Of a DNA stretch of 64,000 nt, positions 26,688 to 54,776 are shown piece by piece. Made by a program: the position numbers and the translations under genes. The first letter of the stretch is position 1. Every line of letters begins with the position of its first letter. The stretch lies in the NCBI GenBank assembly GCA_024679065.1, contig JAGIQG010000009.1, positions 107,446,001-107,510,000 of the forward strand, in the 5' to 3' direction. Under the pieces are notes generated by a model, which searched no databases, was not told where the DNA came from, and saw nothing but the letters and a program-made list of their open reading frames with translations. The stretch is from Sphyrna mokarran (lineage: Eukaryota).

Positions 26688-26939
26688 TCATTGGCGTATC
26701 ATTGGGGCCCGAACTACCCCGTACACTACCGGTTCTTCCATCTGGTTTCGAGGTCTCACTGGCGTCTGATTCTTGTTCTTCTTATCACGACTTTGCCTGA
26801 CTACCGCGTACACAACCTCGCCTTCTCCTCGTTGAGGCGGGGGACCCGCGACATGATTGTTCGCGCGATTCTCCGGTCGCTGTGTTTTGGGTTTGGCGAT
26901 GTGCAGGTCAGCATAAATGACATTGTTCGACGTGTCTCC
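26688..26939 (-). CDS. Gene B terminal exon with three ITIMs
   Basis: VIYADL, VVYAVV and VVYGVV; indels relative to gene A preserve the frame; minus-strand AATAAA at 26189-26194. Confidence 0.85.
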   Translation of the reverse strand, partial: GDTSNNVIYADLHIAKPKTQRPENRANNHVAGPPPQRGEGEVVYAVVRQSRDKKNKNQTPVRPRNQMEEPVVYGVVRAPMIRQ

Positions 26940-29900
26940 CTCCAATGAAACAAAATTTAAAAAGAAAGAAACGGAAATGTTAACATTGCAGCTGCTTAGC
27001 ATAATAATGCGATTCCTGACCTAATGTAAAACTGCACGAAGGTATGTTGCGTAGTTGTGCTTAGAAGTTAGTGTGGCAAAAAAAAAAATGAACATGTGTA
27101 TGGAAAGGCCAAACAGGGTTACCAAGGCAACAGACTTTCAGGCGTTTGAATCTTTTTGAACTCGGCCAATCAATTTGAATCAGGCAATTAGAAACCAACA
27201 ACCTATTAAATTTAAGCCTGATGATTTTGGCAAGTTAGGACCAATCCCATTGAGAGGAATATTGATGTGTCATCACAAGGATAAAAGAAGACAGCAGACG
27301 GGCAAAAGACAGAGGTCAACTGCCGCCTGCTCCAATTCATAGCTCTTAGCTCAATTCTTCGTGTAGATAGTAAAGGTACCAAAGAAGAGAGAAGAATAGA
27401 CAGAGAAGGCCCAGAATTTTCCAAAATACACAAAAGGCGGTTCTAATTGAGAAGGCGACTAAAACTCTATTTCTGTTAATGATTGGAAATTGTATTTGAT
27501 GGAACAACATCCCATTAGAACTGTGTTTTATTCGGTTTGTTCATTATTTAGCTAACTTGTTCCGTGTTATTTGGATAATAAATTGTTACTTGCTAACTTT
27601 AGAGTGTAAGGGAGTTTTCTTGATTTAACTACTAGAGGTCGCTGAAGACCAGGTCACACCACTTTAGATTGACGTTGTACAGATTCAAAACATACTTCTC
27701 TTTGAGTGGTTAGGTGTTAATCCTCGGATCGAGGATAAACTTCTGCTTTATAATAAATACCTTTGCATCCATTGTTCTCCTGCGAAAGGCAGAACAGGAA
27801 TTCAGAAATAGCTTGTAATCTCAGCAATTAATATTGAAGTGAAATTCCTTTAAGTTTTCAACTTGCAGTTAAACCAGTTAGGTTTTTTGTTACTATTCTA
27901 ACGAGGCAGACAATGGTATTATCCTCAGATTATTAATACAAAACTACAGCTAATGTTTTGTAAATCCTGGTACAAATACCGTCATGGTAGATGGTGAATT
28001 TTGAATTCAATAAAAATATAACGGAATTAAGAATCTACAGATGACAATAAAATCATTATCAAATGTCCGAAGAAGCTATCTGGTTCATTCATGCCTTTTA
28101 GGGAAAGAAATCTGCCATCCTTACCCGGTCTGGTCTACATGTGTCTGCAGAGCCACAGTAATGTGGTTGACACTCAGCTCCCCTCAGCAAGCCACCCCAT
28201 TGTTCAAAAGGACAGCTCACCACCAGCTTCTCAACGGGAGTTTGAGGAGTGGGCAATAAATGCTGGCTGGCAAGAGAAGTCTATGACCCACGAATGAATT
28301 AAAAAATACCAGTAAGACAGGCCGAGAACGTTTTGGAATTTTTAGACCTTCACTTGGTTAGCCGTGAACGGATTTCTATTGGTTACAAGTGGTTTTAAAA
28401 GTACGTAGAAACCTCTGACAATTCTTTACTGATCCCAACCTCTCTTAAATGAGGCAATACATAACCTCTCAGAATTTTTTTGAGTTATCTGTCAGTGAGG
28501 TTAGGATTAGTTTTCTTGAAATAGGGTTAGCTCTTTCAAAAGAGAAGGGCATGCTAGCAGTGCTCATGTCCTGCAGCATCGCCCCTGCAGCGATTGGAGG
28601 TTGCGAAATGATTGTTAGAGCTGATATTCATCCCAACACCCATTAGAATCCAGATATACCTTTCCCCTAGGTCTGGAGATTCATCCACTTACAAGGACTT
28701 TAAGCAGGTTAGTATTTTCTCCCTTATTACATTTATCTTATCAAATATTTTAACTTTGTCTCTCTAATTACTTTGTCTGCTTTGTTCCTCTGAGGAAAAC
28801 AGGTGGAAAGTATTCACTAAGAGGCTTGTCCGCGTCACGTGCTTCTTTGGTGTATTTTAACTTTTTGATCTCTAATTCACCTTAATCGTTTCTTCATTGT
28901 CCATTTGTTCTTTGTGAATAGATGGAACATATTTCTAGATTTTCTAAATTATACTTGCCAATGTTTTCCCGGTTCCTTGTTTCCATAATGTTCATAGAAA
29001 TAATAGAATTCCTAAATGCAGAAGGAGGCCATTCGGCCCATCGAGTCTGTACCAACAAAAATCCCACCGAGGTCCTATCCCCATCACCCCACACATTTAT
29101 CCCACTAATCTCTCTAGACTTGGCTTCCCTTGACACTAAGGCTCAATTTAGCACGGACAATCAACATAACCCGCACATCTTTGAAATGTCGCAGGAAACC
29201 TGATCACACAGGGGAAACTCACGCAGACACGGAGGGGAAGGTGCAGATTGCACACCTTCAGTGACCCAAGCCAGGAATTAAACCCAGGCCCCTGGAGCTG
29301 TGATGCAGCCGTGCTAAACAACCGTGTCACAGTGCCGCCCCAAGAGCGTGCAAACGCAATCCCCACTACCAGAAATTTTGCAGTCGGGCATCCCGCATTT
29401 GGGGGCATCGCAGGCATCAGCACAACCGAAGTGCAATGGGCTAACTCGTCCTGGGCGAACCACTTGCTTGATCGTCGTTTCACCCCGTCAAGTAGGTATT
29501 TCATAATCATAGAGCTCAGAGTCAATAATGTAAGGAGACAGACATTAGGCCCATCGAGTCCATGCCTACTGTCTGTAGTGGCATCCAACCATTCCCAATC
29601 GTCCATTTAAACCCTGTAGGTTTATTCCCTTCGTGTTCCCATCTCATTTCCTTCTGAAATCCTTTAGCAGCTTTGCTGATATTTCCTTCCATCTACCTTA
29701 GAGATTGCGAGTTTCAGGTCATCATCACTCGCTGCATAAGGCAGTTCTGCATCATATCCCCTCTCCACTCTGCTGCTCGAAACCTTAAACATTCCTTGCA
29801 ACTTCAGTTGACAGGAACAGCCTTTATTTTCCTCCTTATCGAAACCTGGCAACTCATGTACACCTCTACCAAATAGTCCTCTTCGATCACAATTGACCGA

Positions 29901-32900
29901 AGGAGAACAACCCCAAATTTCCAGCCTAAACTTATAACTAAAACCGTTCAACCTTGGAATCATTCCGATAAATCTTCATCCCGCATTTCGAAATATCATT
30001 TCCGTTCTTGTAAACTATGATGACCAGAATTAGACACAATTACTACTTATTTATTTAGTATGACAGGTAGGCTTATATTAACACTACAATGAAGGTCCTC
30101 TGAGAATCCTCTCGTCGCCACACTCCTATGCTTGTTCGGATACACTGATGGAGAATTAAGCATGGCCAATGCACTTAACCAGTACATTTTTGGGACCGTG
30201 GAAGGAAACCCATGCAGACATAGGGAGAATATGCAAACACTGCACAAAGAGTAACCCAAGTTGGAAATTGAACCCGATGCTGTGAGGCAGCAGTGGTAGC
30301 CATTGTTTTACCATACTCATGCATAATCAGAATGCTATAAAACTTGACTTCCCTGTTTTCATATTCAGTGAAGCGACACAGGAAGGCAAAAGTCCGATTG
30401 CCTTATCAGTTTCCACTCAACTTTAACTACTTATACACGTAAACCTGCAATTCTCGTTTTTTATATTTAAAAATATTACACTTTCCATGCTCCTGTTTGA
30501 TTTGCACCGTTCTGGTTTATTGACATCTGAAATTTGCTTTTTTTTTGCTTCGTGTTGCTCTGCATGCAATGTGGTATATCAATTCAAATTAACTCCCTGT
30601 ATTCAACGTAAGTATTTGCAATACTCAATATTTTGTATGCCGTAACAACTGCCCAAGCAACATTTTACACTCCAATCAAACACCTTTAACCTATGTTCTT
30701 AAGAAATAGGAGCCGGAGTAGGCCATTCGTCCTCTCGAGACTGATGCACCATTCAATTAGATCATGATTGATCTACTTCAGTACAATTTTCCCGCACTAT
30801 CCCCACAGCCCTTCGTTGTTTCCAATATACAATCTCTAACCACACCTGCTGTGCACATACTGAATGATTGAGCCTCACATTATTCTGGGATAGAGAACTG
30901 CAAAGGTGCAGCACACTCAGAAGGGAGAAATTCCATCTCGTTTTAGCTGGGCATGCCTTTCTCCTTACTGTATGCCCCCTGAAATTGAACGATTTAGCTG
31001 TAGGCCTCTATTCAAATTTCTAACTGTAGAGCATGAACTCACACTTGCATCACATTCAATTCTATCTGCCCTGTATCCACAATCCACCAGTCCAATTATG
31101 TTCTCTTGAAATCTAACAACAATCTCCTTCCTGCTCATGATACCTTTTGTGCTGCAATTTTACCATCATCATCAGTTCATTTAAAATGAAGGTATCAAAT
31201 AACGATCAGAGTAATATGTGATTGCTGATTGAATATATTTGTTAATTTTGCTAAATAGAATACTCACAGGTGTGGCGATGCAGTGCCTTTAAGAAATGTA
31301 TTTCAATCATGTTTCTAGTAGCCAATGTTCTTTATTTCTGCTCGGGGAGATTAATAGACATTATGCTAATTTTAATCTGGACAAATGTAGTGTTTTGTGG
31401 TTTAGTGGTCCCTTGATTTGAGATTGATCGACAGTTTATATTAATTAGGAAAAGGAATGTTTCAGGAAAAAGTGCCATTTCAAATTTGTTTGAGTTGCTG
31501 CTAGAAAGAAGGCAATGTCTCTATCTCTGTCTCTCTCCAGGTGTTTGCTGAAAGTTCCAGGACTGAAAGCCTCAGAGATTTAATCCAACATTTAAAGGAC
31601 CAATTCACAGTCGGTATAAGAAGCTTGAAGTCCACTGATTTTATACCAAGTCTAGAGAAATGTTTATGTAGGTGGGATGATGTTTGACTTGAAACAATAT
31701 TGGTAGCTACTTGTAAAGATTCGTATTGTGTTGTGTTTAATTCGTACAATTGGTAAACCCTATTCCAAATCTTTTCATTATATTTTAACTGTGTAATTAA
31801 ACAAACTTTATTTGATAAAAGCTTCCTAGTGTGTCACTTGAATCACACCTCGGCAGAAATAAAGGGCACTGGTTGCAGACAACGCGGTCTCAATAAAATG
31901 CTACTAGGAAGGTGATTGAAATACATTTCTTAAAGGCACAGCATCATCACACTTGTGAGCATTTCATTTAGCAAAAATAGCACATGTATTCAATCTGTAA
32001 TCACATATTCCTCTGATTGCTATTTGATACCATTGTTTTCAACAAATTGATGACGAGGTAAAATTGCAGAACAAGAGGTGTCATGAGCAGGAAGGAGCTT
32101 GTTCTTAATATCTTATGCTCACCCCATGCCAAAATCAAAAGTAAAATTTAGGATCTGGGCTAACTTTATAAAATACTTCACAGTTTTTTGCCTGAGTCCT
32201 GATGTAAGAAAGAGACGTCATTCTGGGCAATATGGAGAGGACCTTACATTTTTCAGAATTAATGTTGTCTTAAAGTAGACTTATAATTCAGATGATTGGG
32301 CAATGGAGCTGTTAATCTGCTGTTTTGATGCAATACTTTCATGTATCAGCGGCATAGTGGCATGCACTGCTACCTCACAGTGCCAGGGGCACAAGTACGA
32401 TTGATGGCGTGGGTCACTGCCTGTGTGGCGTTTGCAAATTCTCCCCATGTCTGCACAGGTTTCCTCTGGGTGCTTCGGTTTCCTCCCACATTCCTAAGAT
32501 GTGCGGGTTAGGTGGATTGGCTATGCTAAATGTCAGGGGGAGTAGCCATGGCAAATGCATAGTGCTATGGGGAAACGGCGTATGTGGGATTGTGGTCGGT
32601 GCAGACTCAATGGGCCAAATAGCCTCCTTCTGTGCTATAGATTTCTATGCTGAGATTTCAACCCTCCATTCTAAAGCAAAAGTCTATTAAAAATTTAAAT
32701 CCTTATATAATTGTAATGTTGGACATTTGTCTTACCTGCGCATCATTTCGAGTTGTTGGTCTTCTATCTGTAAAACGTTTGAGATAAACATATCACTTTT
32801 ATGCGGCGAAGAAGGCAAGTGGAATGAAAAAAAATCAGTTCTTTTCCCGATGAATCAAGTAATCGCTCAATAATGATAGGAAGCCAAAATAAAGTTCTAC

Positions 32901-35900
32901 AGTCAGACCTGAATCCATACCTTTCACTGTGTAAGTGCATGTGAACTTTGGGCTAACTTGAGCACAATGCTGGAGTCCTGGAAATTTTACTAGTCTAGCA
33001 ATCCACAGACAGAGTTTATTACTCTGAGAATTTGAGTCCACATGTCAGTGTGGAATTTAAATTCAATTAATAAATAAATACTTAATTGAAAGCTTGTCTC
33101 AATAATGATAACCGTGAAATGATCGAATATGACAGAAAAACTCATCTGGTTTGATAATGTCTCTTAGGAATCGTTCTTAGTTAAAGTGGTCTTTTCACAC
33201 CAGACCCAGAGAAATGTATTTGACTCTACTGCCACCTGAAATGGTTCTCTACGCTATTCAGATGTTCCTAACCGCTGCCGGAAAGTTAATGAACTGCAGT
33301 CATTCACCACCGCCTTCACAAGGACAGTTAGGATGGGCGACATGCTGGCCTTAACAGCGACAGCCACATCCCGTGAAAGGAGATAACATAAAGGAGATAA
33401 AATATAATTGCAAGTGCATCCTGATGTTAAACATAACGCAATCAGTTACAATTTACTTCTTAGCTCTAAAGACATTATCGTGCTTTACAGTGCATGCCAT
33501 GCTAAAACTCGAAACAATTAAACTAGGAGTAGAAATAGGCCATTCCGCCCTTCGATCCTATTCCACAATTCAATATGACCATGGCTGGTCATCTACCTTA
33601 ATATTCCTGCTTCCTTCCTACACTTCTTTATCTTAGCTTCATGCATGTGAACCGGAGCACTGGTTGAGCTCTCATAAGTCGGTGCCCAAGCATACAGGAT
33701 AGTTGTCAACTCATTAATTGATGCCAATTTTGAAGATTGTCCTCAAAGTTAGCACTGCCGTCAGCTGCTGTAATATTCAGCGATGACTGACTGTCCTCTC
33801 TCGAAAATTTCTCAATGCTATCTGCCTTAGAAGTTGCGTGTTCACACCCCACTCCACAACTTCCAACACAAAATCTGACACTGCAAAATCTGATACTGCA
33901 TGTCCAGTATCGGACATGCTGAATTTGGGATGTGAGGTGAATTCAAGTCTAGGATGACTCTTTTTCCCCAAGATCTCTTAATATGAATATAAACGATCAC
34001 TGCCAACGGGCAGAGGAGTTACCACCATCGCTCCCCCACCATCAAACTCATCTCCCACTCCCATTCAATCCCACAGCCAATATTGATCACTGAGACAAAA
34101 GCCCATGGCCAAATTATCTGATTATTATCACATTCATGCATTTAAAGCCTGTCTTGTCGATCTCCCCACAGTACATTGTGCAAGATATAGATCTTGTGGC
34201 TAAAGGGACCAAGGGATATGGGGGGAGAGCGGGATCAGGATATTAATTTTGATGATCAGCCTTGATCAAAATGAATGGCAGAGCAGGTTCAGAAGGCCGA
34301 ATGGCCCACTTCTGCTTCCATTTTACTATTATGAAACTATTTCATTAGTTGTAAATCTCTCATCAATTCCAGAAATGCTCTACATGTGATCGTGTCGCCG
34401 ATATGGTCACAGGTCATTCGGCCCAAAAAGATGCAAGCTCTCTTTTTCTTTTGCTATTGCCGTTGCTTCATAGCACTCGCGCATCTCCATTCAAGGATGC
34501 TTTTAAACCCTAAATATAGCTGATCACTACTCACCACGATTGGACATGTATGAATTACTTTGACACTTGTTGCGGCTCAAGAAGATAAGAATTGCGATCA
34601 GGAGAAGCAGTATAGTGACCACCAACGCTGAAGACAAAGTGATCAATTTGTGCGTTGAAATTTCTTCCTTGCTCTCGACCTGACCTGGGGAATATGAAAG
34701 GACTATTAATAATAACATCCAGTTAGCTTTTCAATGAACTGAGCCACATATTTGGCTCATTGTAAAGTCACTTTTTAAAAAGTAAATTGTATGTTTTAAG
34801 TGTTTAGTTCCCCTTTCGATAACAATGTATTTGTTTAATTTGATTTGTCGTTGTCACATGTTTTGGGACACAGTGAAAAGTGTTGTTTCTTGCATGCCAC
34901 ATACCGTTCAGAGGGTGCACAGAGGAGAAGGAAAGGAGAGAGTCAGAGATAGTGCTACTGTCATAGCTAGGGTGTAGAGAAAGATCAGGTGCCCCTTTGT
35001 GTTCTGCCGAGTTATATAAAATTATATGAATGAATTTACCTATGAGCGTGTGTAGATGCAAGATGTAGATGTTATACCAACACAAAGCTCATCTTAATTC
35101 AATTAACTTTGCATATGCCTCTTAGCGAAGAAGCTGTGATACAGAATTTAAATTCATGCACTACAGTGGTTGCCCCACCTAACTTTAGATGAATAGATAT
35201 CTGTGCATTCATGTTTGCGTTTCAACACCAAGACAAAGTTTTACTATTTGTCGTAATCGGTTTGAAGTGGAACAGGAATTCACATAAACTTTGACCAGTC
35301 TGGACAGGAACAATGCTAAAAAAACGCATTTCTCTCATCTTGACTCGTGCCAATGAAGGAAACGAAGAAAATAGGATCAGTAAGAGTTGGCCATTCACTG
35401 CGGTGAGCCTGCCCTGCTATGAAGCAAAATAATGGCTGATTTTGTATCTCAATGCCTTATTCCAGTGCTCTCCCCATAGCCCTCACATCCTTACAGTCTT
35501 GAAATCTATCACCTTCCTAACTTTTCTCTATCTCCACTCACCTTCTGTTGTAAAGGGTTCCATGGATTTATCACTGTCTCAGCGAAGATACTTGTACTCA
35601 TCTCAGTCCTAAATGACCTATCCCAAATTATGAGGCTGAGATCTTGGTAGCCAGAAGAATTACCAAATTACCAGCCAGTCTGTCCAGCCATGACAAAATA
35701 TTGTGCACTTCAATGATAGTCCCTCTCACTCTTCTCAATTTCAGTCAATACGAACGCAGTTGACCAAATCTTTCCTCATACGACAATCTTGTCAACTCAA
35801 CAATCAGTCTGACGACTTTCACTGCATTCTCCCTAACGCAATTATATTGCTTCTTAAATAAGGACACACAAACTGCACACAATACTGCAAGTGTGGACTC

Positions 35901-38900: not shown

Positions 38901-41900
38901 GGGCGATGACATGCTGTTCGCACCCCACACACCACCTGGATGGAAAGATGACTGGCTTCACGGCGAACAACCCAACAGCCATAATGCATTGAAGGGCTCT
39001 TTAGTCAGGGCTGAGTATGCTACCCGTTCATCATTGTACCGGATACATTCAATTGCATTGGCCCTGAGCTCCATCAGTCCCGACAACGCCAGAAAGGCGT
39101 GAATCGCAGCTACCTTGATTTCAGATAGGCACCCAAACCCCAGTGCCTTCGGAGAAAGTAATTCCAAGGTCTTGGCCCAAAAGGGTTTGGTGGTGCTCGG
39201 GACAGGAGGTGCGTTGTGGGTTGTGGGGGGAGGGGGTGAGTGTGGGGATGTTGTTGAGTAGGTTGAATTTCAGAGGACGAGCGGGTAGGAAGTATATGGG
39301 TGCAATTGCAATCTGGAGGTCATCCCAGTATTTACCTTTAGTCCATTTCAGGATAAAAACCGGACTTTCGCTTCCTGCTCTTCCGCCCACGCCAAAAGCA
39401 CTTTGTCCAGAAACAAAGGTCAGGCAGTCTCACATGCAATTTGCACATTTAACTCTATACCCCATACTAATATAGAAACAACTTCAAAATAAATGTTTTA
39501 ATGAAGTGCAAGTTAAACAAATAATTAATATAAAACTGGATAAATGAGCGTTAATCTTCCTGGGTTCAAAATGAACATGTTCCTCATGACTATTATCTCA
39601 GAATTACAGTGTGGATATTGTGGGAATAATTAGTTTGATCGGTTATTGAAAAGAATAAATGTAAAGAAAGGCAGATGATAGCATATAGGAACGTACCTTT
39701 AACAATTACCCGTGTGCCCCTTCCAGTTTCTTTGCCAATTAAGAACAAAACGACTTCACAATAATACATCCCGGAATCATTCCGATTTGCCTCCATGACT
39801 GTAATTTGGCTGACTTTTAAAGATAGTTCAACTTTCTCCAAAATTCGGCCTTCAGATTTGTTCGAAACCAAATTCTCTTTTCGACCTGATACCTCCTTGT
39901 ACCAATGGAATGCAAAAACTGATGTCTTATTTGACTCAATAAATGTACAGGATATTTGAAATTTCCCTCCTTCTGTTGCTTCGATAATCTCTGGGCTTTG
40001 AATTACTTTGACGTCGGCAATAGCAGCAGCTGTAAAACAGAAATTCCAGTTATACTTGTTAGACAAACCTGCTCCTCTCCTCAAACAACTGTCTTGGCAC
40101 CTTGTCAATAATTCATTTGCGGCTCATAGCAAATTCAAACAACGAATCCCCACTTACATCCCTTGACCTTCAACAGGAAGATGAACATTGAATTTTCTAC
40201 CATGAATCATTTTAGTGTGAACAATTCTTTCTTCCCCTGCAACCTTTAAGCCTAAGCAATTTCATGGGATCAATATCACATCCAAATTCGCGTCTGAGTA
40301 TGTACATACTAGATATTGTCCATCTCTTTGATGTCTATTGAATCAGCCTGAGACTGTTAAAGGCTAATACAAGTACAGTACTGCGATTTCTGGAAATCTG
40401 ACATAAAAGCACAAATGCTGAATAAACTCAGCCGATCTGGCAGCATCTTTGGATAGGGAAGCAGGAGATAACGTTACAACTCCAACGACGCCTCCTACAA
40501 TGGACTAGAAACGCCAACTGTGTCGATTACCACAGATGCGGCCAAAACTTCTCATTTTATCCAGAGTTTTCTGTTTTTATTTGTGTTACAGGCCAATGTT
40601 AAAGGCCCTGTTCACAGATATCTTCCGCCACTTCTCTAGTCATTTGAAGTGGTGTTGAAGATGTTAGGAACAGCACCAGCAACACTGAACGTCAGGTGCC
40701 AAGCTGGTGTCGATACAGCATATGCAAGCTAAACGATAGAACAGCGTGTTATGAATACTGATCTATCCAAAACTAACGGATCACATACAGCCCCTGCAGA
40801 GTTGCCCCAACTACTCGTGAATGGTTGTGGGTTATTAAATTATTAATAGGAGGAGGAAGAGGTCCCCCATCCTCAATAACGGGGAATTTGGCGCATCAGT
40901 GCGAAAGAAAGGACAGAAGCTTTTGTAACCATCTTTAATCGGGCAGCACGGTAGGACAGGGTTAGCATTGCTGTTTCACAGCGCTAGGACCCCCGGGTTG
41001 GATCCCTGGTTTGGGACACTCTCTGTCTGGTGTCTGCACATTCTCCCCGCATCTGCGTGGGCTTCTCCGGGGGCTCTGGTTTTCTCCCGTGGTCTGAAAG
41101 GCTTGTTAGAATTATTGACCTGAACAGTTGCCGGACAGTGCCGACTAGTGGAATTTCACAGTAACTTCATTGCAGTGTTAATGTACATGTGACTAACAAA
41201 TAAATAAACTTCAATGAGCTGTTGAGAGCGGATGATCCATCCCGGCTTGTTTCTCACGTTCACGAAATCAGAGATTTTGCTTCAAATTACTCGATTCACT
41301 TCACATAACAAGAAGTTGATGAAAGCCTGCGTATGGCACAAGATGTGGGACCTAATCACATTCAGACAGCATTTCTGTTGGTTTGTGTTCCAGAACTGAT
41401 CATTCTACAAGAACACGGGAACCGTGAGCGGGAGTAGGCCGCTCGACTTCTTTAACCTTCTCCATCATTCAATAATATCATGGCTAATCTAAGTGTGAAC
41501 AGCACGTTACTGTCTGTCCATCGTATCCCGTGACTCACTCGGTGATCAACAGTGTGTCAAAATGAGCCTCAAACACGACAATGACACATATTCTGGACGG
41601 TAGAATTTCTCAGATAAAAGTGGTGGTGCGAGGACAGCTCTCGGATGTTGATTCATGGGTTGCCTGGTACTTCATGTCGTAAATGAGTGCTTTATCTGGA
41701 CCATCTGAAGGGCACCATGACAGCTCAGTGACTATCGCTGTAGCTGTGCAGACACTTGGAATTGGGCCGGTGTCTGCGGGAGTTTGCGCGTTCTCCCCGT
41801 GGTTGCGTGGGTTTTCTCCGGGCGCTCCGGTTTCCTCCCACATCCCAAAAATTCGCTCTTAAGCTGATTGAAAAACAAATTGTCCCTATATTGAGATTCT

Positions 41901-42483
41901 TCCATATTAGAAATAACCTAAAATTAAAATAGGAAATGGAATTGTCACTATAAAGTTATGACGGCGGCGCGGGCTCGTTGGGCCGAAGGGCCTGTTTCCC
42001 GTGCTGTGTTGCTCTTTGAAAAGGCCCCTTGAGAGAAAATAATGTTCCCCTAACTCAGAATCGTAGAATCCCAATAGTGCAGAGAAGACTATTTGGCCAT
42101 CCAGTCTACACGGACTGTCTGCAGAGCATTTTACCCTGTTCTCCGCCCCATTCCTGTAAACCCTCACATTTCCCTTGACTAATTCATTCTTAAAAGAAAA
42201 GAGCATCAGGCGCCCGGTAAATGCCCTTTATTTCCCCACCTTTGTTTGAACACATACACCCATTGTGCTGCTTTGAAACCCTGGAACACCTTTCTAGCAA
42301 CACACTGGGCATTCCTATACTACAAAGAACCGCAGCAGCTTAAGACACCAGTCCACCAACATCTTCTCAAGGACAATTGGTATACAATAAATGATGGCCC
42401 TTTTGGTGAAGGGCCATTAACAAGAAATGTAACTAAGTTTAAGACTTACCAGAAATTAGCAGTATACCTATAACTGGACACAT
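26688..42483 (-). CDS. Gene B: NKp30/NCR3-like V(J)-domain receptor, inhibitory type (3 ITIMs); join(42450-42483,39697-40029,34535-34684,32736-32767,26688-26939), ~266 aa
   Basis: Exons total 801 nt in one open frame, all GT-AG: MCPVIGILLISAAAIA|DVKVIQSP...YYCEVVLFLIGKETGRGTRVIVK-GQVESKEE...LIAILIFLSRNKCQSNSYMSNR-DRRPTTRNDAQ-GDTSNNVIYADL...VVYAVV...VVYGVVRAPMIRQ*. Confidence 0.82.
27045..27755 (+). mobile_element. Solo LTR, paralog of 1735-2450
   Basis: Collinear similarity at the same intronic position in gene B; TSD decayed. Confidence 0.65.
29340..29499 (-). pseudogene. U1 snRNA pseudogene (near full length)
   Basis: The reverse complement ATACCTACTTGACGGGG...GATCA...CCATTGCACTTCGG.TGTGCTGA...CCCCAAATGCGGGA...CGACTGCAAAATTTCTGGTAGTGGGGATTGCGTT is collinear with vertebrate U1; the 5' splice-site-pairing end is mutated. 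Confidence 0.88.
29510..30045 (-). mobile_element. Degraded CR1 3' fragment (inverted copy at 4078-4600)
   Basis: Residual RT C-terminus (MIPRLNGFSYKFRLE) and a CR1-type 3' UTR. Confidence 0.65.
31116..32103. repeat. ~190-bp inverted duplication (31116-31309 vs 31913-32103) overlapping an LTR-like element
   Basis: For example AGTGCCTTTAAGAAATGTATTTCAATCA vs TGATTGAAATACATTTCTTAAAGGCACA, and CTCCTTCCTGCTCATGA vs TCATGAGCAGGAAGGAG. Confidence 0.8.
32736..32767 (-). CDS. Gene B 32-nt cytoplasmic exon (DRRPTTRNDAQ)
   Basis: TTTTACAG acceptor and CAG|GTAAGA donor; paralog of 4864-4895. Confidence 0.78.
34535..34684 (-). CDS. Gene B stalk/uncharged TM exon
   Basis: CCCCAG acceptor and G|GTGAGT donor (weaker alternative A|GTAATT at 34559); hydrophobic LITLSSALVVTILLLLIAILIFL. 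Confidence 0.83.
35360..37440 (-). mobile_element. Old degraded CR1-type LINE (partial paralogs ~7440-8380 and ~51120-51440)
   Basis: Broken ORFs such as NGMLAFIAKGFE...PHLQYCVQF and KCEVVHF are typical of CR1 RT. Confidence 0.75.
39697..40029 (-). CDS. Gene B Ig V-set (VJ) exon
   Basis: 333 nt (9-nt in-frame deletion relative to paralogs); open frame and canonical V motifs. Confidence 0.9.
42450..42483 (-). CDS. Gene B leader exon (MCPVIGILLIS)
   Basis: 34 coding nt, G|GTAAGT donor, paralogous to 16860-16893. Confidence 0.85.
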
Positions 42484-44735: not shown

Positions 44736-44834
44736 TTTAATTAGGAAGAGAAATGTGCAGCCAACTTCTGCAATTATTTTTCGCCTGTACTGTAAAAGAA
44801 TTATTTATAGAAAAAATACGGGAAGCATGACGTC
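44736..44834 (-). promoter_or_regulatory. Putative promoter and first exon of gene B
   Basis: Paralog of 20155-20253 with the same donor and ETS/CRE motif. Confidence 0.45.
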
Positions 44835-47800: not shown

Positions 47801-47997
47801 ATGATTAAAAACATACTTCTTAAAGGCACAGCAGTATGACATGTACCATCGGACTGTTGTCAGATATGGCTAACTCTTATGTGGCTGCAGGTCCACCAAA
47901 ACAGTAACCCACTTTTATTTTATGTAAGGTCTCCTGATTAACTTGAATGGAGAACTGTAAATTCACCAGTGAAAGACAGATTCCAGGAAAATATAGG

Positions 47998-48230
47998 GCA
48001 TAGATAGATAGGCAGTCGGACAGATTGGCAGGCAGACAGATAGATGGACAGACAGGCAGAGAAACAAATAGATAGATAGATGGATAGATCAATGAATTGA
48101 GAGATAGACAGGCTGGCAGGCAGACAGACTGACAGACAGACGGATGGATGGATAGATAGATAGATAGATAGGTAGATAGATAGATAGATAGATAGATAGA
48201 AACGCAGACAGATAGATAAATAGATAGATG
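47998..48230. repeat. Compound (GATA/GACA/GATG)n microsatellite
   Basis: Seen directly; much shorter in the paralog at ~23350-23400. Confidence 0.95.
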
Positions 48231-50261
48231 ATTGGCTTATTGAATAAACATTCTGGCACTGTTTCCGATGTATGGTGAAGAAAAAATGAATTAACCATAA
48301 TCCACAACAAAGCTTCAGACAAACATCACAAAGCCTGTCTAAGATAATAAAAGTTACCAATAGTGACGTGCAAACATCCTTACTTTATCGAATAGAAGAA
48401 AAGGTTCATCTGAACTATGTGTTTTATTTTAAAGTCCACAGTTCCTACATTGCCAGATTGAATTCATTCAGGTTTCATTCTTTGATTGTAATGAAAGAGT
48501 CTGTGACAATAATCGGTCATTTCCCTTTAAACGGATCTACTTTAAAAAGATATATGTGGCAATATTCGTTACAATTAGAATTTTACATATGGTCCAGTTA
48601 CAATCAGTTTTATATTGTTTAGTTTTGATTTAAGCTAGATTTTTTCTCTGGTGCATATGCGTTACCAGATCTTTAGAATCATAGAAACCCTCCAGCATTC
48701 TGCCCATCTGCATCGACTCTCTGAAAGAGCATCTCACCATGGCCCAATCCCCATAAACCTGAGTATTTGCCAATCCATCCACGTAACATCCACATCTATG
48801 CACACTGCGTGGTAATTTAGCATGACCAATCAACCTAACCTCTACATTTTTGGACTGTGGGGCGATAGCGTGCAAACTCCAGACTGTCACCCAAATTCGG
48901 ATGGCCAGCGTGCCACCGTGCTACCATGTCAGCATGTCTTTGATAAGTCAAAATGACAAGAGGTAGGGAGTGACAAGCTCAATTATTACGAGGTGATGAT
49001 CCCGTATCGAATCGCATCATGAAACATGGTGGCAATACATAAAAGGTTAGCTACAAAATACCATTTGCGTCAAAGGTGTTGTCAAATCTCATTGTTGGTT
49101 AATGATAGAAGGGCCCCTGTTGTTCATAGCCTAAGTCGAATCTCATGTAAGTTTCCTTCACTTGCAGGGTGAGCGTGCAAAGTGGAGTAAATTCAATGAT
49201 CAACAGCAAAGTTAACAACAAATACTTAGAGAAAAGGACAAGAAAAGTCGAAAATAAATTCATGTTTCATTCTCTGCGATGACGAGTCATGCTTTGTTAA
49301 GTTAGAATTCTCCTTGCTTTTCCCAGTAAACTGAATAATCATCAAATAAGCATCCCCCCTTCCTGTATTGCAGGCTAACATCGGAATTTGAACTATAGAG
49401 CTGCATACGTTATATATTTCATAGCACATATTTACATTTAATGATAATGAAGGAGAAAATATAACAATTGTTCGCTAATAATGAGTGTTAGATCGTACAC
49501 TTATGCTTTTATGTGTTTTTTGTTCTTATATGATTGACATTATCTGACTCTTGTCATCTTTTCCTGTCTTCGATGGGGGAAAAATACGACATGGTGTAAG
49601 AGCGTTTACAAGTATCAATGTCAATTTTTTTTCTCTGCAATTAGGAGATAAAATTACTTAAAGTGGAACCTGGGACATATGAAATTGTCAATGACTGCGC
49701 CATCTAATGGACTTTGTACAATAACGCAGAATACAATGTTTTATTAGTAAACCATTTAAAGATATAAAGGGTTGGGGGGGGGCAGCGGGAGAGCTAATGA
49801 AGGGCATATGATCGTACCCGAACACACGTGATATTGGCATACATGCTTCTTTCCGTTTGCATTTAACACCTAGAGCCTTGGGCAGCATAGTGGCCCAGTA
49901 GTTAGCACTGCTACCTCACACAGCCAGGGACCCGAGTTTGATTCCTGGCTCGGGTCACTGTCTGTATGGAGCTTTCACGTGCTCCCCGTGTCTGCGTGGG
50001 CTTCCTCTGGGTGTTCCAGTTTCCTGTGACAGAATGAAAGACGTGCTGGTCTGGGGCATTGGCCATGCTAAATTTTCCCAGAATGTACCCGACCAGGCAC
50101 TGGAGAATGGCGACCTATGGATTTTCACAGTGACTTCAGTGTAATGGTGATCCTACTTGAGGCGCTAATAACTAAACTAAAAAAAAAACACTTCTGCAGT
50201 CACTTTATAATCAACTGCAAATACAATTTGTCCAAAATGTCAATCGGTTTAGTTTAACTTT

Positions 50262-50455
50262 TTACCATGAGATGCTGCCAGCTGTGGTACCTTCTTCACG
50301 CTCTGCAGCGAGAAGCTTCGGAGAACCTCGAAACTCGCAGCAATATACGAGAGATATCGTTATTATGATTAACGCAGCAAACACTGCAAGCCTCACTCCC
50401 ATCGCAATCAGCTGCCTTTGCAGCGAATATCTCGTGTTATCCGGTTGCTCCCATC
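50262..50455 (-). CDS. Gene C stalk/TM(Arg)/short tail exon
   Basis: TTCTCTACAG acceptor, phase 1 matching the V donor, hydrophobic helix with one Arg, TAA at 50262-50264, minus-strand AATAAA at 49740-49745. Confidence 0.8.
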
Positions 50456-53400
50456 CTGTAGAGAACGAACAGTCAAATACAGTAATTGCTTTAATCTATT
50501 CACTCGGTCAACTTATCGAAATAGTTAGGATTTTTTTCCCAATTTCTTGTGTACTAGTGCCCCGCAGGTTGTTCATTGCGTATTGTATCCAAAGTTGGAT
50601 GCCTTGGAAAAGCAGCCAGCATAATTAAGGACCCCAGACACTCCGAACATATTCTCTTCCATCTTCTACCGTTGGAAGAAAGATTTTAAAAACACCACCT
50701 GTAGCAGAGTCAAAAATTCCCTGTTGCTATTGGACTTTTGATCGGAAACAGAAAATGCTGGAAAGTTTCAGCAGGCCCTTTGTTTTGATTCTGGTTATTC
50801 ATTCAACAGAGCTGAAAGGAGAGCAATGAAAATCAGACGTATACTATAAGTTGGGGGGAAGTGGGCTTTAGTTGGACAACGGAAATGTAAATGATGATGC
50901 CGAAGGAAGAGAAAGGTACTAAAAGTGTCCGTTAAGGGGATTGGAATGTGTGAATAGCAGAAAAGAATTGAAGAGATCTCCCAGTCTGCGTTTGGTGCCT
51001 TTGATGTACTTTCTGAGCTAGTCGACATTGGAGGGACCAAACAATGACTGGGTGACGGCTTTGTAGAACATTTTTGGATCATCTGCAAGCAGGACCCAGA
51101 CCTTCTTGTCGCTTTGAGTCTTAGCTTTTATCACATGTTTTTATATGATTGCAGAAGCTTTGAGTGATCATTTTTGCTATCTGCAGGTTTACTTTCATAC
51201 TCTATTCCCCCTTAATCAAACTTTTGGACTTCTTTGCTAAATATTGAAATTTTCCTAATCCCCTAGATTGCTACTTTTCCTAGCAAAATTATAGGAGTCC
51301 TGTTTAGATCTAATATTATCCTGAGTGGTGGCATATTTGGGCCACTTTTCTTGTTTTGTTTTTGCACCAGAAAGAGATATATAATGGCTGCAATGCATAT
51401 CTTATTTTCTTAAGTATTAGCTACTGCCCAGCTACCATCATAGGAACGATAGAAACCATAGAATCCATGTAGCGCAGAAGGAACCCATTGGACCAATTCA
51501 GTTTGCACAAATCACAATTACATCAGCCCCTATCTGCGTAGCCCCTCTTATTTAGCATGGTAGTCTCCCTGAAACTGAAAGTCAATTTAGCATGGCCAAT
51601 CAACCAAGCCCACACATCTTTCCATCTTAATGAAGAATTCTGTCATGTTACTGACACTGTTCCCTAAATGATTACGCACAAGAAAGTGATTAACTAACCC
51701 ATTGTCAGTGTATAAGTATAAATCTATGATGAAATGTTTCCTCGTTGCTTCATAGTTGAACATATTGGTTAACAAAAAAACACGCACATATATATCACAA
51801 TATTGTTGTTAATTTGCTTTGCCCAATCAATGGGTAGAGTATTTTACATTCATCCATGTGGTGTAGGCTTCTATCTCATTACCTTTCTCTAAACGCCCTT
51901 CTACAGTGTAGCCTGCTTAGCCATCTAGAATTATAGAATCCTTCAGATTGAGGTTATTCGGCCCATCCAGTCTGCACTGACCATAATCCCATCCAGACCC
52001 TCTCCTCATAAATTTACCCTAGCTAGTCGCTCTGATGCTAAAGGGAAATTTACCACGGCTTATCCATCTAATCTGTTTGGGACGACTATGACAGGAAACC
52101 GGAGCACTCGGGGGAAACCCGTGCTGACACGGGGAGAATGTGCAAACACCACACAGTCAGTGACCCAAGCTGAGAATCGAACTTAGCTGTGGCGAACAGT
52201 GCTAATTACTGTGCCATCGTCTCTTTAGACATGTCTTTCTTGCATTTTTGTACAATTTATGTATCTCTACCTAATGGACTTATAGAATGGAGTTCAGGAG
52301 CCAATCAGCATTGATGAGACTCGATGGGTCGAATGGCTTATTTCTGCTCCTAGATCTTATGGTAATGTGGCCCTCTATCTCAGATGCTGCAGGGCTGCAA
52401 TGATCAACATCGATACGAAGGCAGTAAACCATGGAGGAATTTGAAATCTCATCAAGAGCCATCAATTAAATTTAGGAAGAATACAAATGAACGGTGAATG
52501 GGTTGTGAGCAAGTTAAGTTAGGAAACGAAATGTATAGGTAACGAATGCATGGACGAAGATTTTCGCAGCACGGAGCCTAAGGTAGAGTTAGGGTGTGGG
52601 ACATAAAGCAGATAGACGTGCACAATCTTCCTGATCGTACGAAAGGATGGTCAGAATCAAATATGGGGTCGAATGAAATACCAAGTTGGGAAATGTCTGA
52701 CTCAGTTTGAGAGAATTACTCGCAATTGAGACAGTGGACATGAAGGTGAGTTTGTGATGGGGACAGAAAACGATGGCATCAACCTTCCCAATGTTTGTTG
52801 CCGAAAATGTCTGGTCTCCCAATTTCAGTAATTAGAAACAATTCGCTTGAATAATACACGGGGCGATGACATGCTTCTTCCAGCCCACGCATCACCTGGC
52901 TGGAATGACGATTATCTCCATGCCAACCATCCCAACAGCCCATAACGCACTGCAGGGGCTGTCAGCCAGGGCTACGCTTTCATCATCGTACCCAATGCAT
53001 CCAATTGTATTGGCCCTGAGCTACATCAATCTCGAGAAAGCCAGGAAGGCGTGAATCACAGCTACCTGGTCTGCAGGTAGGCACACAAACCCCAGTGCCT
53101 TCGGAGAAAGAAATTCCAGAGTCTCGGTCCAAATAGGTTTGGTAGTATTGCGGACAGGGAGTACTGTGGGAAGAGAGCACGATTTGGGGGATATGGGGGC
53201 GAGGGGTACGTTAATTTCAGAGAAGGAACAGGCAGGAAGGAGTTGGGCTCAATATTCAATTTAGGTGGCAGGCCCTGTATTCGCGTTTAGTCAATTTCAG
53301 GGTTAAAAAAGACTTTTGGTTCCACATTTTTGCCCACGCCAAACGCATTATGTCCAGATACAAAAATCAGACAGTCTCACATTTAACACTATGCCCCAGG

Positions 53401-54776
53401 CTAATATAGAAATAACTTTGAATTATATGCTTTAATGGTGTACAAGTTAAACAAATAATTAATATAGAAATGGATAAATGAGCGTTAATCTTGATGGATT
53501 CAAAATGAACACTTTCCTCGTGACTTCTTTCTCAGAACTATATAGTGAATATTTTAGGAATAATTAGTTTGATCTGTTATTGAAAAGAAAAAGTTTAAAG
53601 AAAGGCAGATGGTAGCATATAGAAACGTACCTTTAACAGTTACCCGTGTGCCCCTTCCAGTTCCTTTGCCAATTAAGAACAAAACGACTTCACAATAATA
53701 CATCCCGGAATCATTCCGATTTGCCTCCATGATTGTAATTTGGCTGTATTTTAAAGATGGTTCACGTTTCTCCAAAACTCGGCCTACAAATCTTTCAGAT
53801 TTGTTCAAAAACAAATTCTCTTTCCGACCTGATACCTCCTTGTACCAGTAGAATACAAAAACTGATATCTTGTTTGACGCAGTAAATGTACAGGAGATTT
53901 GAAATTTCCCTCCTTCTGTTGCTTCGATAATCTCTGGGCTTTGAATTACTTTGACGTCGGCAATAGCAGCAGCTGTAATACAGAAATTCCAGTTATACTT
54001 GTTAGACAAACCTGCTCCTCTCCTCAAACTATTGTCCTGGCACCTTGCCAATAATTCATCTGCAAATTCATTCAAAGAATCCCTACGACCATCCCTTGAT
54101 CTTCAGTAGGAAGATGACCACTGAATTTTCAATTTGAACCATTTTGGTGTGAACAATTCCTTCTTCCCCTGCAGCCTTTAACCCCGAGCAATTTTCTGAG
54201 ACTGTTAAAAGGCAATACAAGTACAATACTGCGATTTCTGGAAATCCGACATTAAAACACAAATGCTGAATAAAAATCCGGCAGCGTCTCTGGAGAGGGA
54301 AACAGGAGTTAACGTTACCAGGAGTCCAACGACGTCTCCGACAATGGACTGGAAACGATAGATGTATCGATAACCACAGATGTGGCTAGATCTGCTCACT
54401 TTAGCCAGAGTCTTCTGTTTTTATTTGTGTTAACAGCCAATGTTAAACTCCTCCGGGCACTTCTCTAATCGTTTCATAAGAAGTGGTATTGCACACGTTA
54501 CGAGCAGCACCAGGCAACACTAAGTATCAAGTGACGACCTGGTGTCGATACAAACATGCAAACTAAACGATAAAAGCAACATGTTATCAATACTGATCTA
54601 TCCAAAACTAACAGATCACATCTAACCTCTGCACAGTTGCCCCAACAACTTCTCAAGGACAATTAGTATGTTGTCCTTTTTGGTGAAGTCCACTTCCCAT
54701 TAATAAATGTAACAAGAAATACAACTAAGTTTCAAGACTTACCAGAAATTAGCAATATACTCATAACTGGATACAT
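50262..54776 (-). CDS. NCR3: Gene C: NKp30/NCR3-like activating-type receptor (TM arginine, short tail without ITIM); join(54743-54776,53631-53972,50262-50455), ~189 aa
   Basis: 570 nt open frame: MYPVMSILLISAAAIA|DVKVIQSP...YYCEVVLFLIGKGTGRGTRVTVK-GWEQPDNTRYSLQRQLIAMGVRLAVFAALIIITISLVYCCEFRGSPKLLAAEREEGTTAGSISW*. The single VJ domain, short stalk, N-terminal TM Arg and short tail match mammalian NKp30 architecture. The symbol denotes family, not proven orthology. Confidence 0.78.
50740..51115 (+). mobile_element. Penelope-like element fragment (GIY-YIG remnant)
   Basis: 51021-51113 translates as VDIGGTKQ*LGDGFVEHFWIICKQDPDLLVA, similar to the YIGETKRRLGDRFAEHL region of PLE endonucleases; partial paralog ~25300-25530. 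Confidence 0.6.
53631..53972 (-). CDS. Gene C Ig V-set (VJ) exon
   Basis: 342 nt, open frame, DSGMYYC...GKGTGRGTRVTV. Confidence 0.9.
54743..54776 (-). CDS. Gene C leader exon (MYPVMSILLIS)
   Basis: 34 coding nt, G|GTAAGT donor, paralogous to the other leaders. Confidence 0.85.

What the first reader, a model, noticed from the sequence alone, without database searches (positions are those of the whole stretch)
26688..54776. Paired activating/inhibitory NKp30-like receptor system with a shared ligand-binding domain
Seen: adjacent genes C and B encode nearly the same V domain (14 substitutions plus a 3-aa indel by manual count; identical FG-loop EVVLFLIGK) but opposite signalling modules. C has a TM with Arg (LIAMGVRLAVFAALIIITISLVYCC) and a short tail with no Tyr motif. 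B has an uncharged TM and three ITIMs. Known: mammalian NKp30 is a single-gene activating receptor whose TM Arg pairs with CD3zeta/FcRgamma, whereas paired receptors are typical of KIR, Ly49, LILR/PIR, Siglec and teleost NITR families. Multi-gene shark NCR3 families are known, but I cannot check whether this pairing has been described. Inference: this is a KIR/Ly49-like paired-receptor system built on the ancient VJ NKp30 scaffold in a cartilaginous fish.
Basis: partly seen in the sequence, partly recalled or inferred. Interest (0 to 1): 0.92.

Follow-up and report, generated by a model that had tools for sequence, protein, structure and literature searches.

The report
Paired shark NKp30-like receptor genes
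Two neighbouring shark immune-receptor genes of the NKp30 family carry almost the same outer binding domain but opposite signalling ends, which looks like an "on/off" receptor pair of a kind well known in other receptor families.

Summary
On the minus strand, gene C (leader 54776, V exon 53972-53631, Arg-TM terminal exon 50455-50262) and gene B (leader 42483, V exon 40029-39697, uncharged TM exon, three-ITIM tail ending at 26688) have V domains that differ by 14 of 110 residues plus a 3-residue indel. All splice sites are canonical.

New here:
- The window holds about 25-kb tandem units with a third, inhibitory gene (A).
- A frameshifted orphan copy of the Arg-TM exon lies at about 25000-24836.
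- The B/C V exons are 94% identical against 80-83% in their introns (dS 0.057), which points to gene conversion.
- V domains cluster by taxon, not by tail type.

Both tail types already exist in public shark and ray NCR3-like entries. These include two author-named nurse shark NCR3 proteins. So this is a new, unusually tight member of a known kind, not a new principle.

No RNA run was listed, so splicing, expression, adaptor pairing, SHP recruitment and ligand sharing remain inferred. The key paper (Kinlein 2021) was not held. The scan had already noted similar paired NKp30-like clusters in other windows of this genome.

The parts
54743..54776 (-). Gene C leader exon (MYPVMSILLIS + 1 nt), donor G|gtaagt
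53631..53972 (-). Gene C V exon. A single VJ-type V-set domain, phase 1 at both ends, ending in the J-like motif GRGTRVTVK
   Evidence: (Pfam V-set, E 1e-13)
50262..50455 (-). Gene C terminal exon: stalk, TM with Arg (LIAMGVRLAVFAALIIITISLVY), 28-residue tail without a Tyr motif, then the stop
49740..49745 (-). First AATAAA after C's stop, 516 nt downstream
42450..42483 (-). Gene B leader exon (MCPVIGILLIS + 1 nt), donor G|gtaagt
39697..40029 (-). Gene B V exon
   Evidence: (V-set, E 2.4e-10)
34535..34684 (-). Gene B stalk and uncharged TM exon. It has a strong donor G|gtgagt after 34535. The donor homologous to gene A's is A|gtaatt after 34559
32736..32767 (-). Gene B 32-nt cytoplasmic micro-exon (xRRPTTRNDAQ), acceptor ttttacag, donor CAG|gtaaga. 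It is homologous to ERTPRTRNKAQ of the Mustelus protein P0001
26688..26939 (-). Gene B tail exon with three ITIMs (VIYADL, VVYAVV, VVYGVV) and the stop
26189..26194 (-). First AATAAA after B's stop, 493 nt downstream. It lies upstream of the orphan exon
24836..25000 (-). Orphan copy of the Arg-TM exon. The acceptor is kept but the frame is broken (net -8 nt inside the TM, plus a 1-nt deletion and a 1-nt insertion), so it is a pseudo-exon
25531..25974 (.). SINE-like dispersed repeats filling the junction between B's 3' flank and the orphan exon's flank
16860..16893 (-). Gene A leader exon (MYPVTGVLLIS + 1 nt)
13683..14024 (-). Gene A V exon A1, intact
10667..11008 (-). Gene A second V exon A2, with an in-frame stop (pseudo-exon, unless it is skipped)
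6678..6806 (-). Gene A uncharged TM exon, donor CAA G|gtaatt
4864..4895 (-). Gene A micro-exon (DRTPTTRNEAQ)
1387..1629 (-). Gene A three-ITIM tail exon (VIYADL, VVYAVV, VVYGVV)

Best explanation
The window is part of a tandemly expanded cluster of shark NCR3 (NKp30)-family genes, all on the minus strand.

Gene C encodes a signal peptide, one VJ-type V domain, a short stalk, a transmembrane helix with an Arg at the family's conserved Lys/Arg position, and a short motif-less tail. It is the activating type. It is inferred to signal by pairing the Arg with an acidic residue in an ITAM adaptor (CD3zeta/FcRgamma or DAP12 type).

Gene B encodes nearly the same V domain on an uncharged TM and an approximately 100-residue tail with three ITIMs. 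It is the inhibitory type, inferred to recruit SHP-type phosphatases once phosphorylated.

The two genes are old paralogues (introns about 80% identical). A tract of about 0.5 kb over the V exon has been homogenised recently, most simply by gene conversion. The two receptors therefore still present almost the same binding face, and their remaining differences sit in the BC to C''/D/E part of the domain.

Shown here: the exon anatomy, family likeness, conservation of both tail modules, the identity step between exon and intron, and the discordance between the V-domain tree and tail type. Inferred: transcription and splicing, adaptor and phosphatase binding, a shared ligand (a B7H6-like protein is the obvious candidate), and the cell type.
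For: Anatomy:
- All exons of C and B are open, with canonical splice sites and a nearby AATAAA.

Family:
- Pfam V-set, E 1e-13 for C and 2.4e-10 for B.
- A profile of 19 family sequences scores human NKp30 chains at 64.6-67.3 bits. That is higher than any other chain holding one V domain among the 60 rows shown; the higher rows are chains with several Ig domains: scFv, diabody, single-chain TCR or pIgR chains.
- The nearest database proteins are shark entries named NCR3 or NCR3-like.

Tail modules:
- C's TM exon matches bamboo-shark P0160 at 17/31 residues (E 6e-10) and S. torazame P0014 at 16/25 (E 3e-8). A Lys sits opposite C's Arg in all 5 chondrichthyan sequences that align there.
- B's tail matches Heterodontus P0016 at 45/82 residues (E 2e-25) and all three ITIMs are kept.
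- The orphan copy of the Arg-TM exon, at similar divergence (86% column identity), has lost its frame, while C's copy has not.

Homogenisation:
- B versus C V exon is 312/332 nt identical (94.0%). The downstream intron is 1881/2352 (80.0%, Fisher p 1e-11) and the upstream intron 467/561 (83.2%, p 1e-6).
- Synonymous differences are 4 over 73 sites (dS 0.057; p 9e-4 against the intron) and dN/dS is 1.15, so this is not purifying selection.
- The other 5 V-exon pairs show no difference between exon and intron (p 0.08-0.70).

Tree:
- C and B are sisters at 100/99 support.
- Tail type changes at least 4 times among 21 labelled rows.
- A single clade of the 9 chondrichthyan charged-TM V domains is rejected (log-likelihood 96 lower; AU p far below 0.05) (the same result with a slightly different set).
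Against: - No transcript evidence. The look-up of sequencing runs listed no RNA run, so read laying could not be used and the junction 53631->50455 is a prediction.
- With the single sequence, NKp30 (32 bits) does not stand out from TCR and antibody V domains.
- I made no tree with CD28-family, NITR, SIRP or TCR outgroups, because no such sequences were on hand from the tools.
- The orphan exon shows that Arg-TM exons in this cluster can be dead relics.
- B's homologous TM-exon donor has A instead of G at its last exon base.
- I named the charged-TM group for the AU test after seeing a first tree.
- The dN>dS signals between the other paralogues (p 0.013 and 0.015) do not survive correction for 6 tests.
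Confidence: 0.68

Rival explanations
1. Gene C is not a working receptor. It is an unexpressed or decaying by-product of the segmental duplications that built the cluster, and only the ITIM genes function.
For: A second copy of the Arg-TM exon (25000-24836) is clearly dead. Gene A carries a dead V exon. No RNA evidence could be obtained.
Against: C's three exons are all open with canonical splice sites and a poly(A) signal. The TM module keeps the family motif, including the charged position. Charged-TM family members exist as gene models or cDNA-derived entries in at least 8 other cartilaginous fishes.
Confidence: 0.14
2. The B/C likeness is not gene conversion. It comes either from a very recent duplication of the V exon region or from strong selection to keep the same binding surface.
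For: Exons are normally more conserved than introns. About 100 nt upstream of the V exon is also conserved among C, B and A2.
Against: A recent duplication would make the flanking introns equally alike, but they are 80-83% identical. Purifying selection would lower dN but not dS. Here dS is 0.057 against an intron difference of 20%, and dN/dS is 1.15. The other five V pairs show exon identity equal to intron identity.
Confidence: 0.1
3. The genes are VJ-type IgSF receptors but not true NKp30/NCR3 relatives. They could be a separate shark family nearer to NITR, SIRP, CD79b or pIgR-like V domains, and the 'NCR3-like' names are automatic labels.
For: Automatic names of relatives vary: 'immunoglobulin superfamily member 11-like', 'cd79b', 'polymeric immunoglobulin receptor-like', 'uncharacterized'. 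The single-sequence PDB search ranks TCR alpha and V-NAR slightly above NKp30. No outgroup tree was made.
Against: The family profile puts NKp30 first among chains with a single V domain. Author-named nurse shark NCR3 entries fall in the same search family (E 4.7e-14 for P0036; P0164). Sturgeon and bichir proteins named NCR3 are also hit and root the tree sensibly. An unchecked scan note puts AIF1, a class III MHC neighbour of NCR3 in mammals, 184 kb away.
Confidence: 0.12
4. Activating and inhibitory forms come from one complex transcription unit by alternative 3' exon use (V spliced either to TM/ITIM exons or to a downstream Arg-TM exon), not from two separate genes.
For: In the repeat unit an Arg-TM exon sits only 1.7 kb downstream of an ITIM exon (26688 against 25000).
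Against: That downstream exon is frameshifted and lies beyond two AATAAA signals. C has its own leader and V exon, with no TM or ITIM exons between its V and its Arg-TM exon.
Confidence: 0.04

Closest known systems
Shark NCR3 (NKp30) gene family. Author-named nurse shark entries QTT61904.1 and QTT61903.1; Kinlein et al. 2021, Immunogenetics 73:333 (paper not held; its content is recalled only from the abstract)
   Same: Single VJ-type V domain in one exon. It is a multigene family. One nurse shark entry has a Lys in the TM at the position of C's Arg (P0036). Another has an uncharged TM and a tail with LTYAQV (P0164).
   Different: The two nurse shark V domains are only 31% identical to each other, so they are divergent subtypes, not a pair. 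The window's C and B are 87% identical in V and lie next to each other. The window has Arg where the 5 aligned cartilaginous-fish sequences have Lys.
Mammalian NKp30 (NCR3)
   Same: V-set domain with a J-like G-x-G-T motif. It is the best single-V PDB match of the family profile. It has a TM Arg and a short tail, as in gene C. The pairing of that Arg with CD3zeta appears in the introduction passage of PMC12272517 seen.
   Different: In mammals it is a single-copy, activating-only gene (stated from general knowledge). It has no ITIM-bearing paralogue with the same V domain. Sequence identity to the shark V domains is low (32 bits with the single sequence).
Paired activating/inhibitory receptor families (KIR, Ly49, LILR/PIR, SIRP, Siglec, CEACAM, teleost NITR)
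   Same: Neighbouring genes with near-identical ectodomains. One has a charged TM and short tail, the other has ITIMs. There is evidence of sequence exchange between them, and of tandem expansion with dead relics. The concept as described for CEACAM comes from the abstract of PMC5112662 seen. The other families are named from general knowledge.
   Different: The scaffold is different (a single non-rearranging VJ domain of the NKp30 type) and so is the host group (a cartilaginous fish). Function is untested.
RefSeq NCR3-like or uncharacterised gene models of other elasmobranchs (Mustelus asterias LOC144497825, Scyliorhinus, Carcharodon, Heterodontus, Hemitrygon, Hypanus, Mobula, Chiloscyllium)
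   Same: Same exon modules. The Mustelus protein P0001 has the same leader, TM, micro-exon peptide and three ITIMs as B and A. P0014, P0088, P0093, P0159 and P0160 have the same charged-TM module as C.
   Different: V identity to the window's genes is 68% or lower. Same-species charged/ITIM V identities are 30-63% in the 6 comparisons made.

Membership tests
NCR3 / NKp30 family | One V-set Ig domain encoded with its J-like segment (G-x-G-T-x-V-x-V) in a single, non-rearranging exon | tested here: met
   Pfam V-set E 1e-13 (C) and 2.4e-10 (B). GRGTRVTVK (C) and GRGTRVIVK (B) end the same exon.
NCR3 / NKp30 family | V domain closer to NKp30 than to other solved V domains | tested here: inconclusive
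   With the family profile, NKp30 chains score 64.6-67.3 bits, the best single-V chains among the 60 rows shown. With the single sequence, NKp30 scores 32 bits, slightly below a TCR alpha chain (35.9) and a V-NAR (34.5).
NCR3 / NKp30 family | Nearest named relatives are NCR3 genes | tested here: met
   S. canicula, S. torazame, C. carcharias, Heterodontus, Hemitrygon, Mobula and Huso entries named NCR3-like, and two author-named nurse shark NCR3 entries. RefSeq names are automatic, and some relatives carry other names.
NCR3 / NKp30 family | Clade with tetrapod NKp30 that excludes CD28-family, NITR, SIRP, CD8, CD79 and TCR/Ig V domains | not tested
   No outgroup sequences were available from the tools. 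The trees hold family members only, rooted on sturgeon and bichir NCR3.
NCR3 / NKp30 family | TM with a basic residue and a short tail without signalling motifs | tested here: met
   Met for gene C. Not met for genes B and A, which have an uncharged TM and three ITIMs.
NCR3 / NKp30 family | Linkage to the MHC class III region | not tested
   The only pointer is an unchecked scan note of AIF1 184 kb before the window (s1-886599). Nothing in this window bears on it.
NCR3 / NKp30 family | Binds B7H6 | not testable with these tools
   Needs protein binding assays.
Paired activating/inhibitory receptors | Neighbouring genes with near-identical ligand-binding domains | tested here: met
   96/110 residues identical plus a 3-residue indel. 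The V exons lie 14 kb apart on the same strand.
Paired activating/inhibitory receptors | One partner has a charged TM and short tail, the other has ITIM(s) | tested here: met
Paired activating/inhibitory receptors | Ectodomain homogenised between partners, or history discordant with the tails | tested here: met
   Exon 94.0% against introns 80.0% and 83.2%. dS 0.057. The tree rejects a clade by tail type.
Paired activating/inhibitory receptors | Both partners expressed; opposite signalling through an ITAM adaptor and SHP phosphatases; same ligand | not testable with these tools
   No RNA run was listed. The rest needs bench work.

The most novel reading that the evidence does not exclude
The MHC-linked NCR3 family is the cartilaginous-fish counterpart of KIR/Ly49. 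It would be a rapidly expanding, gene-converting, positively selected paired NK-receptor system built on the pre-rearrangement VJ domain. Activating partners would be repeatedly re-matched to their inhibitory neighbours' binding face, twice within the galeomorph clade sampled here. That would place a full paired-receptor logic, and its arms-race dynamics, at the base of jawed vertebrates and next to the MHC.
Probability: 0.4. Interest if true: 0.6.

Novelty: new member of a known kind. Interest (0 to 1): 0.42.

Why it matters
Which receptors do the work of KIR, Ly49 or NITR in sharks is still an open question. A tight activating/inhibitory pair on the NKp30 scaffold, kept alike by gene conversion, is a concrete candidate. 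It is also testable: two ectodomains for ligand fishing (B7H6-like genes), one Arg to mutate and three tyrosines to mutate.

The window also shows how such a cluster is built. It has 25-kb tandem units, an orphaned activating exon and a dead V exon. This is useful for annotating the many mis-named gene models of this family. The finding does not change the known principle of paired receptors, and both tail types were already in public shark data.

Tried and rejected

Literature. Kinlein 2021 (by DOI, PMC8273117 and PubMed id), Flajnik 2012 (PMC3709836) and a recalled id for a 2015 review were not held. Six text searches were made:
- 'NKp30' + 'nurse shark' + 'ITIM' found 0 papers.
- 'XMIV' found only unrelated papers.
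- The search on 'NKp30', 'ITIM', 'cartilaginous' and 'paired receptors' found no paper on shark NKp30 pairs.
- The passages I read only cite the shark papers or list NKp30 among VJ domains.
So I cannot say whether the pairing is in print. Those papers' supplements were also out of reach.

Alternative use of the orphan Arg-TM exon by gene B. Rejected because that exon is frameshifted and lies past two poly(A) signals.

Origin of C or of the orphan exon. I weighed three readings:
- a deletion of B-like TM and ITIM exons to make C;
- a deletion of an activating gene's leader and V exons to leave the orphan;
- a tandem duplication whose breakpoint fell in C's intron.
The unit map and the repeats at the junction fit the last two best. 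They do not decide, so I leave it open.

Micro-exon. A first motif scan found nothing. A local tblastn with pieces of homologues found it.

P0085 (Heterodontus) has both a TM Arg and Tyr motifs, and a very long branch. I dropped it from the final tree. P0054 has only TVYAAV (ITSM-like, not a canonical ITIM), so it was left unlabelled.

Of the 24 proteins fetched, four were never put in a tree: P0011 (two V domains), P0121 and P0137 (fragments) and P0152 (no TM).

Full report
WHAT IS THERE. All genes lie on the minus strand.

Gene C:
- Leader exon 54776-54743 (MYPVMSILLIS plus one base, donor G|gtaagt).
- V exon 53972-53631 (acceptor ...attacag, donor G|gtacgt, phase 1 at both ends).
- Terminal exon 50455-50262 (acceptor ...ctctacag), which in phase reads WEQPDNTRYSLQRQLIAMGVRLAVFAALIIITISLVYCCEFRGSPKLLAAEREEGTTAGSISW and stops.
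- An AATAAA follows 516 nt later.

Gene B:
- Leader 42483-42450.
- V exon 40029-39697.
- Stalk/TM exon from 34684, with an uncharged core (LITLSSALVVTILLLLIAILIFL).
- Last exon ending at 26688 that holds VIYADL, VVYAVV and VVYGVV.

A CORRECTION TO GENE B. Homologous gene models in other sharks carry a short peptide between the TM and the first ITIM (ERTPRTRNKAQ in Mustelus P0001). A local tblastn found its counterpart in B's intron. It is a 32-nt exon at 32767-32736 with acceptor ttttacag and donor CAG|gtaaga. Gene A has one at 4895-4864. With it the tail exon starts at 26939 in phase 0 (GDTSNN...), as in the homologues.

In gene A the TM exon's donor is CAA G|gtaatt. In B the same site reads CAA A|gtaatt, and a strong G|gtgagt lies 24 nt further on. 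Either donor keeps the frame. Which one is used needs RNA.

THE WINDOW AS A WHOLE. Self-comparison shows tandem units of about 25 kb: 1-25530 matches 25974-50976 at about 80% identity, and a third, partial unit begins near 51 kb.

There are four V exons: C, B, and two in the lowest unit (gene A). A1 at 14024-13683 is intact. A2 at 11008-10667 has an in-frame stop. Gene A otherwise repeats B: leader 16893, TM exon 6806-6678, micro-exon, and a three-ITIM tail at 1629-1387.

A second copy of C's Arg-TM exon lies at about 25000-24836, only 1.7 kb downstream of B's stop. It keeps its acceptor but has a net 8-nt loss inside the TM plus two single-base indels, so it is dead. The 0.44 kb between B's 3' flank and this orphan's flank is filled with SINE-like dispersed repeats.

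C's V exon and 2.5 kb of its intron match B's (54149-51139 against 40262-37100). Homology then switches to the Arg-TM flank (50976-49374 against 25530-23945). The orphan is most simply a by-product of a duplication or deletion whose breakpoint fell between an activating gene's V exon and its TM exon. I could not decide between these.

FAMILY.
- The V exons are Pfam V-set.
- The exhaustive representative search gave 284 proteins at E<=0.001. The best single-domain hits (49-56% identity) are shark proteins.
- By name these are NCR3-like, or uncharacterised models from Scyliorhinus, Carcharodon, Heterodontus and Pristiophorus, and the author-named nurse shark NCR3 entry QTT61904.1.
- Further hits include ray, sturgeon and bichir NCR3 entries.
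- The closest protein found is Mustelus asterias LOC144497825, 63% identical to C's V domain and of the B type.
- A profile of 19 family members puts human NKp30 chains (64.6-67.3 bits) above every other chain with a single V domain among the 60 rows shown. With one sequence alone NKp30 does not stand out.
- I did not make an outgroup tree, so membership rests on these searches and on names.

BOTH TAIL MODULES ARE OLD AND CONSERVED. C's stalk and TM aligns with five other cartilaginous-fish proteins around S-L-x-x-Q-L/M-x-x-x-G/A-V/L/A-(K/R)-L-A/V/T-x-F. All five have Lys where C has Arg. BLASTP gives 17/31 identities with Chiloscyllium P0160 (E 6e-10) and 16/25 with S. torazame P0014 (E 3e-8). 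B's tail is 45/82 identical to Heterodontus P0016 and all three ITIMs are kept. Mustelus P0001 also has all three.

THE PAIR.
- B and C V exons are 312/332 nt identical (94.0%). Their downstream introns are 1881/2352 (80.0%) and their upstream introns 467/561 (83.2%). Fisher p is 1e-11 and 1e-6.
- Only 4 of the 20 exon differences are synonymous, over 73 synonymous sites (dS 0.057, dN 0.065, ratio 1.15). The synonymous rate alone is below the intron rate (p 9e-4). Low divergence at silent and replacement sites alike points to recent copying, not purifying selection.
- The other five V-exon pairs have exon identity (79-84%) equal to intron identity (78-82%).
- The near-identical tract runs from about 54060 to 53570. 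Its two ends are 99/100 and 97/100 identical. Twelve of the 14 substitutions and the indel fall between residues 30 and 80.
- Between the other paralogues dN exceeds dS (ratios 1.05-2.68). Two pairs reach p 0.013 and 0.015, which does not survive correction for six tests.

V TREE AGAINST TAIL TYPE. I built a maximum-likelihood tree of 27 V domains. These were 4 from the window and 23 stored proteins that I chose as single-V family members: 19 of the 150 listed, 2 and 2.
- C and B are sisters (100/99). They sit inside a clade with A1, A2 and the Mustelus ITIM protein.
- The S. torazame Lys-TM protein sits among Scyliorhinus ITIM proteins, and ray Lys-TM proteins sit with ray ITIM proteins.
- Tail type changes at least 4 times among 21 labelled rows (10 charged, 11 ITIM, 6 unlabelled).
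- Holding the 9 chondrichthyan charged-TM rows together costs 96 log-likelihood units and is rejected by the AU test.
- I defined that group by a trait that is not in the alignment, but only after seeing the first tree.
Because the charged-TM module is itself homologous across sharks and rays, the discordance means V exons and tails have been re-assorted or homogenised repeatedly.

HOW UNUSUAL IS THE PAIR? In six same-species charged/ITIM comparisons, V identity was 63% (S. torazame), 41% (Hypanus), 38% (Chiloscyllium), 30% twice (Heterodontus) and 31% (nurse shark). The window's pair is 87%. These partners came from a library collapsed at 50% identity and from word-based searches, so close pairs elsewhere may simply have been hidden.

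WHAT IS KNOWN. Multigene shark NCR3 families are published. That paper and the 2012 B7H6/NKp30 paper were not held. I know their abstracts only from memory: eight divergent nurse shark subtypes, MHC linkage, and expression in T-lineage and other cells.

The public nurse shark entries themselves show both tail kinds. QTT61904.1 has a Lys TM. QTT61903.1 has an uncharged TM and LTYAQV. RefSeq holds both kinds for many species.

The scan's own earlier notes (unchecked) flag similar 'paired NKp30-like' clusters in neighbouring windows and 10.6 Mb away in this genome, and AIF1 184 kb away.

My text searches found no paper that describes a shark NKp30 activating/inhibitory pair. The library lacks the key papers, so this is weak evidence of absence.

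MECHANISM AND VERDICT. The most likely reading (about 0.68) is a working paired receptor. C would couple through its TM Arg to an ITAM adaptor. B would inhibit through three ITIMs. Both would see the same or nearly the same ligand, because their V exon is kept alike by conversion.

Shown: the anatomy, family likeness, module conservation, the identity step and the tree discordance. Inferred: everything about expression and signalling.

This is a good, clean example of a known kind of system on a scaffold where the pairing may not have been spelled out. It is not a new principle.

LIMITS. There were no reads, no structure model, no genomic context of homologues, no outgroup tree, and no access to the primary papers or to any supplements.

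Noticed in passing
window 32736-32767 and 4864-4895 (minus strand): A conserved 32-nt cytoplasmic micro-exon of the ITIM-type genes (xRRPTTRNDAQ / DRTPTTRNEAQ), easy to miss in annotation. It matches ERTPRTRNKAQ in the Mustelus model.
   Followed up: yes
window 24836-25000 (minus strand): An orphan, frameshifted copy of the Arg-TM exon 1.7 kb downstream of gene B's stop. SINE-like repeats (25531-25974) sit at the junction.
   Followed up: yes
window 10667-11008 (minus strand): Gene A has a second V exon from a 2.7-kb local duplication, and it carries an in-frame stop. An unchecked scan note reports a two-V receptor 12.7 kb beyond the window's end.
   Followed up: partly
window 29340-29499 (minus strand): A U1 snRNA match (Rfam RF00003, 85.5 bits, gathering score 69.5, full length) inside gene B's long intron. 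It could be a gene copy or a pseudogene; not examined.
   Followed up: no
window 53972-54079 and the matching stretches upstream of the B and A2 V exons: The roughly 100 nt of intron just upstream of the V exon is 88-92% identical among C, B and A2. That is clearly above the rest of the leader intron (69-83%). It could be part of the conversion tract or a conserved splicing or regulatory element.
   Followed up: partly
window 472-626, 9062-9222, 12085-12240, 25531-25804, 49883-50141, 62963-63097 and others: Many copies of a dispersed element of about 150-280 bp (65-84% alike) lie throughout the cluster, several of them next to homology breakpoints.
   Followed up: partly
window 48143-48229 and 59717-59937: (GATA)n and degenerate (TCCA)n microsatellites. 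The first underlies a spurious 140-aa ORF rich in YLSI.
   Followed up: no
stored proteins P0085 (Heterodontus) and P0164 (nurse shark QTT61903.1): A divergent NCR3 subtype lineage. The Heterodontus member has both a TM Arg and Tyr motifs (LEYSTI, LTYVQS) in a long tail, so its signalling type is ambiguous.
   Followed up: no
stored proteins P0160 (Chiloscyllium, named 'cd79b'), P0007 ('immunoglobulin superfamily member 11-like') and P0011 ('polymeric immunoglobulin receptor-like'): Public automatic names for members of this family are inconsistent. P0160 is 82% identical to nurse shark NCR3 QTT61904.1.
   Followed up: no
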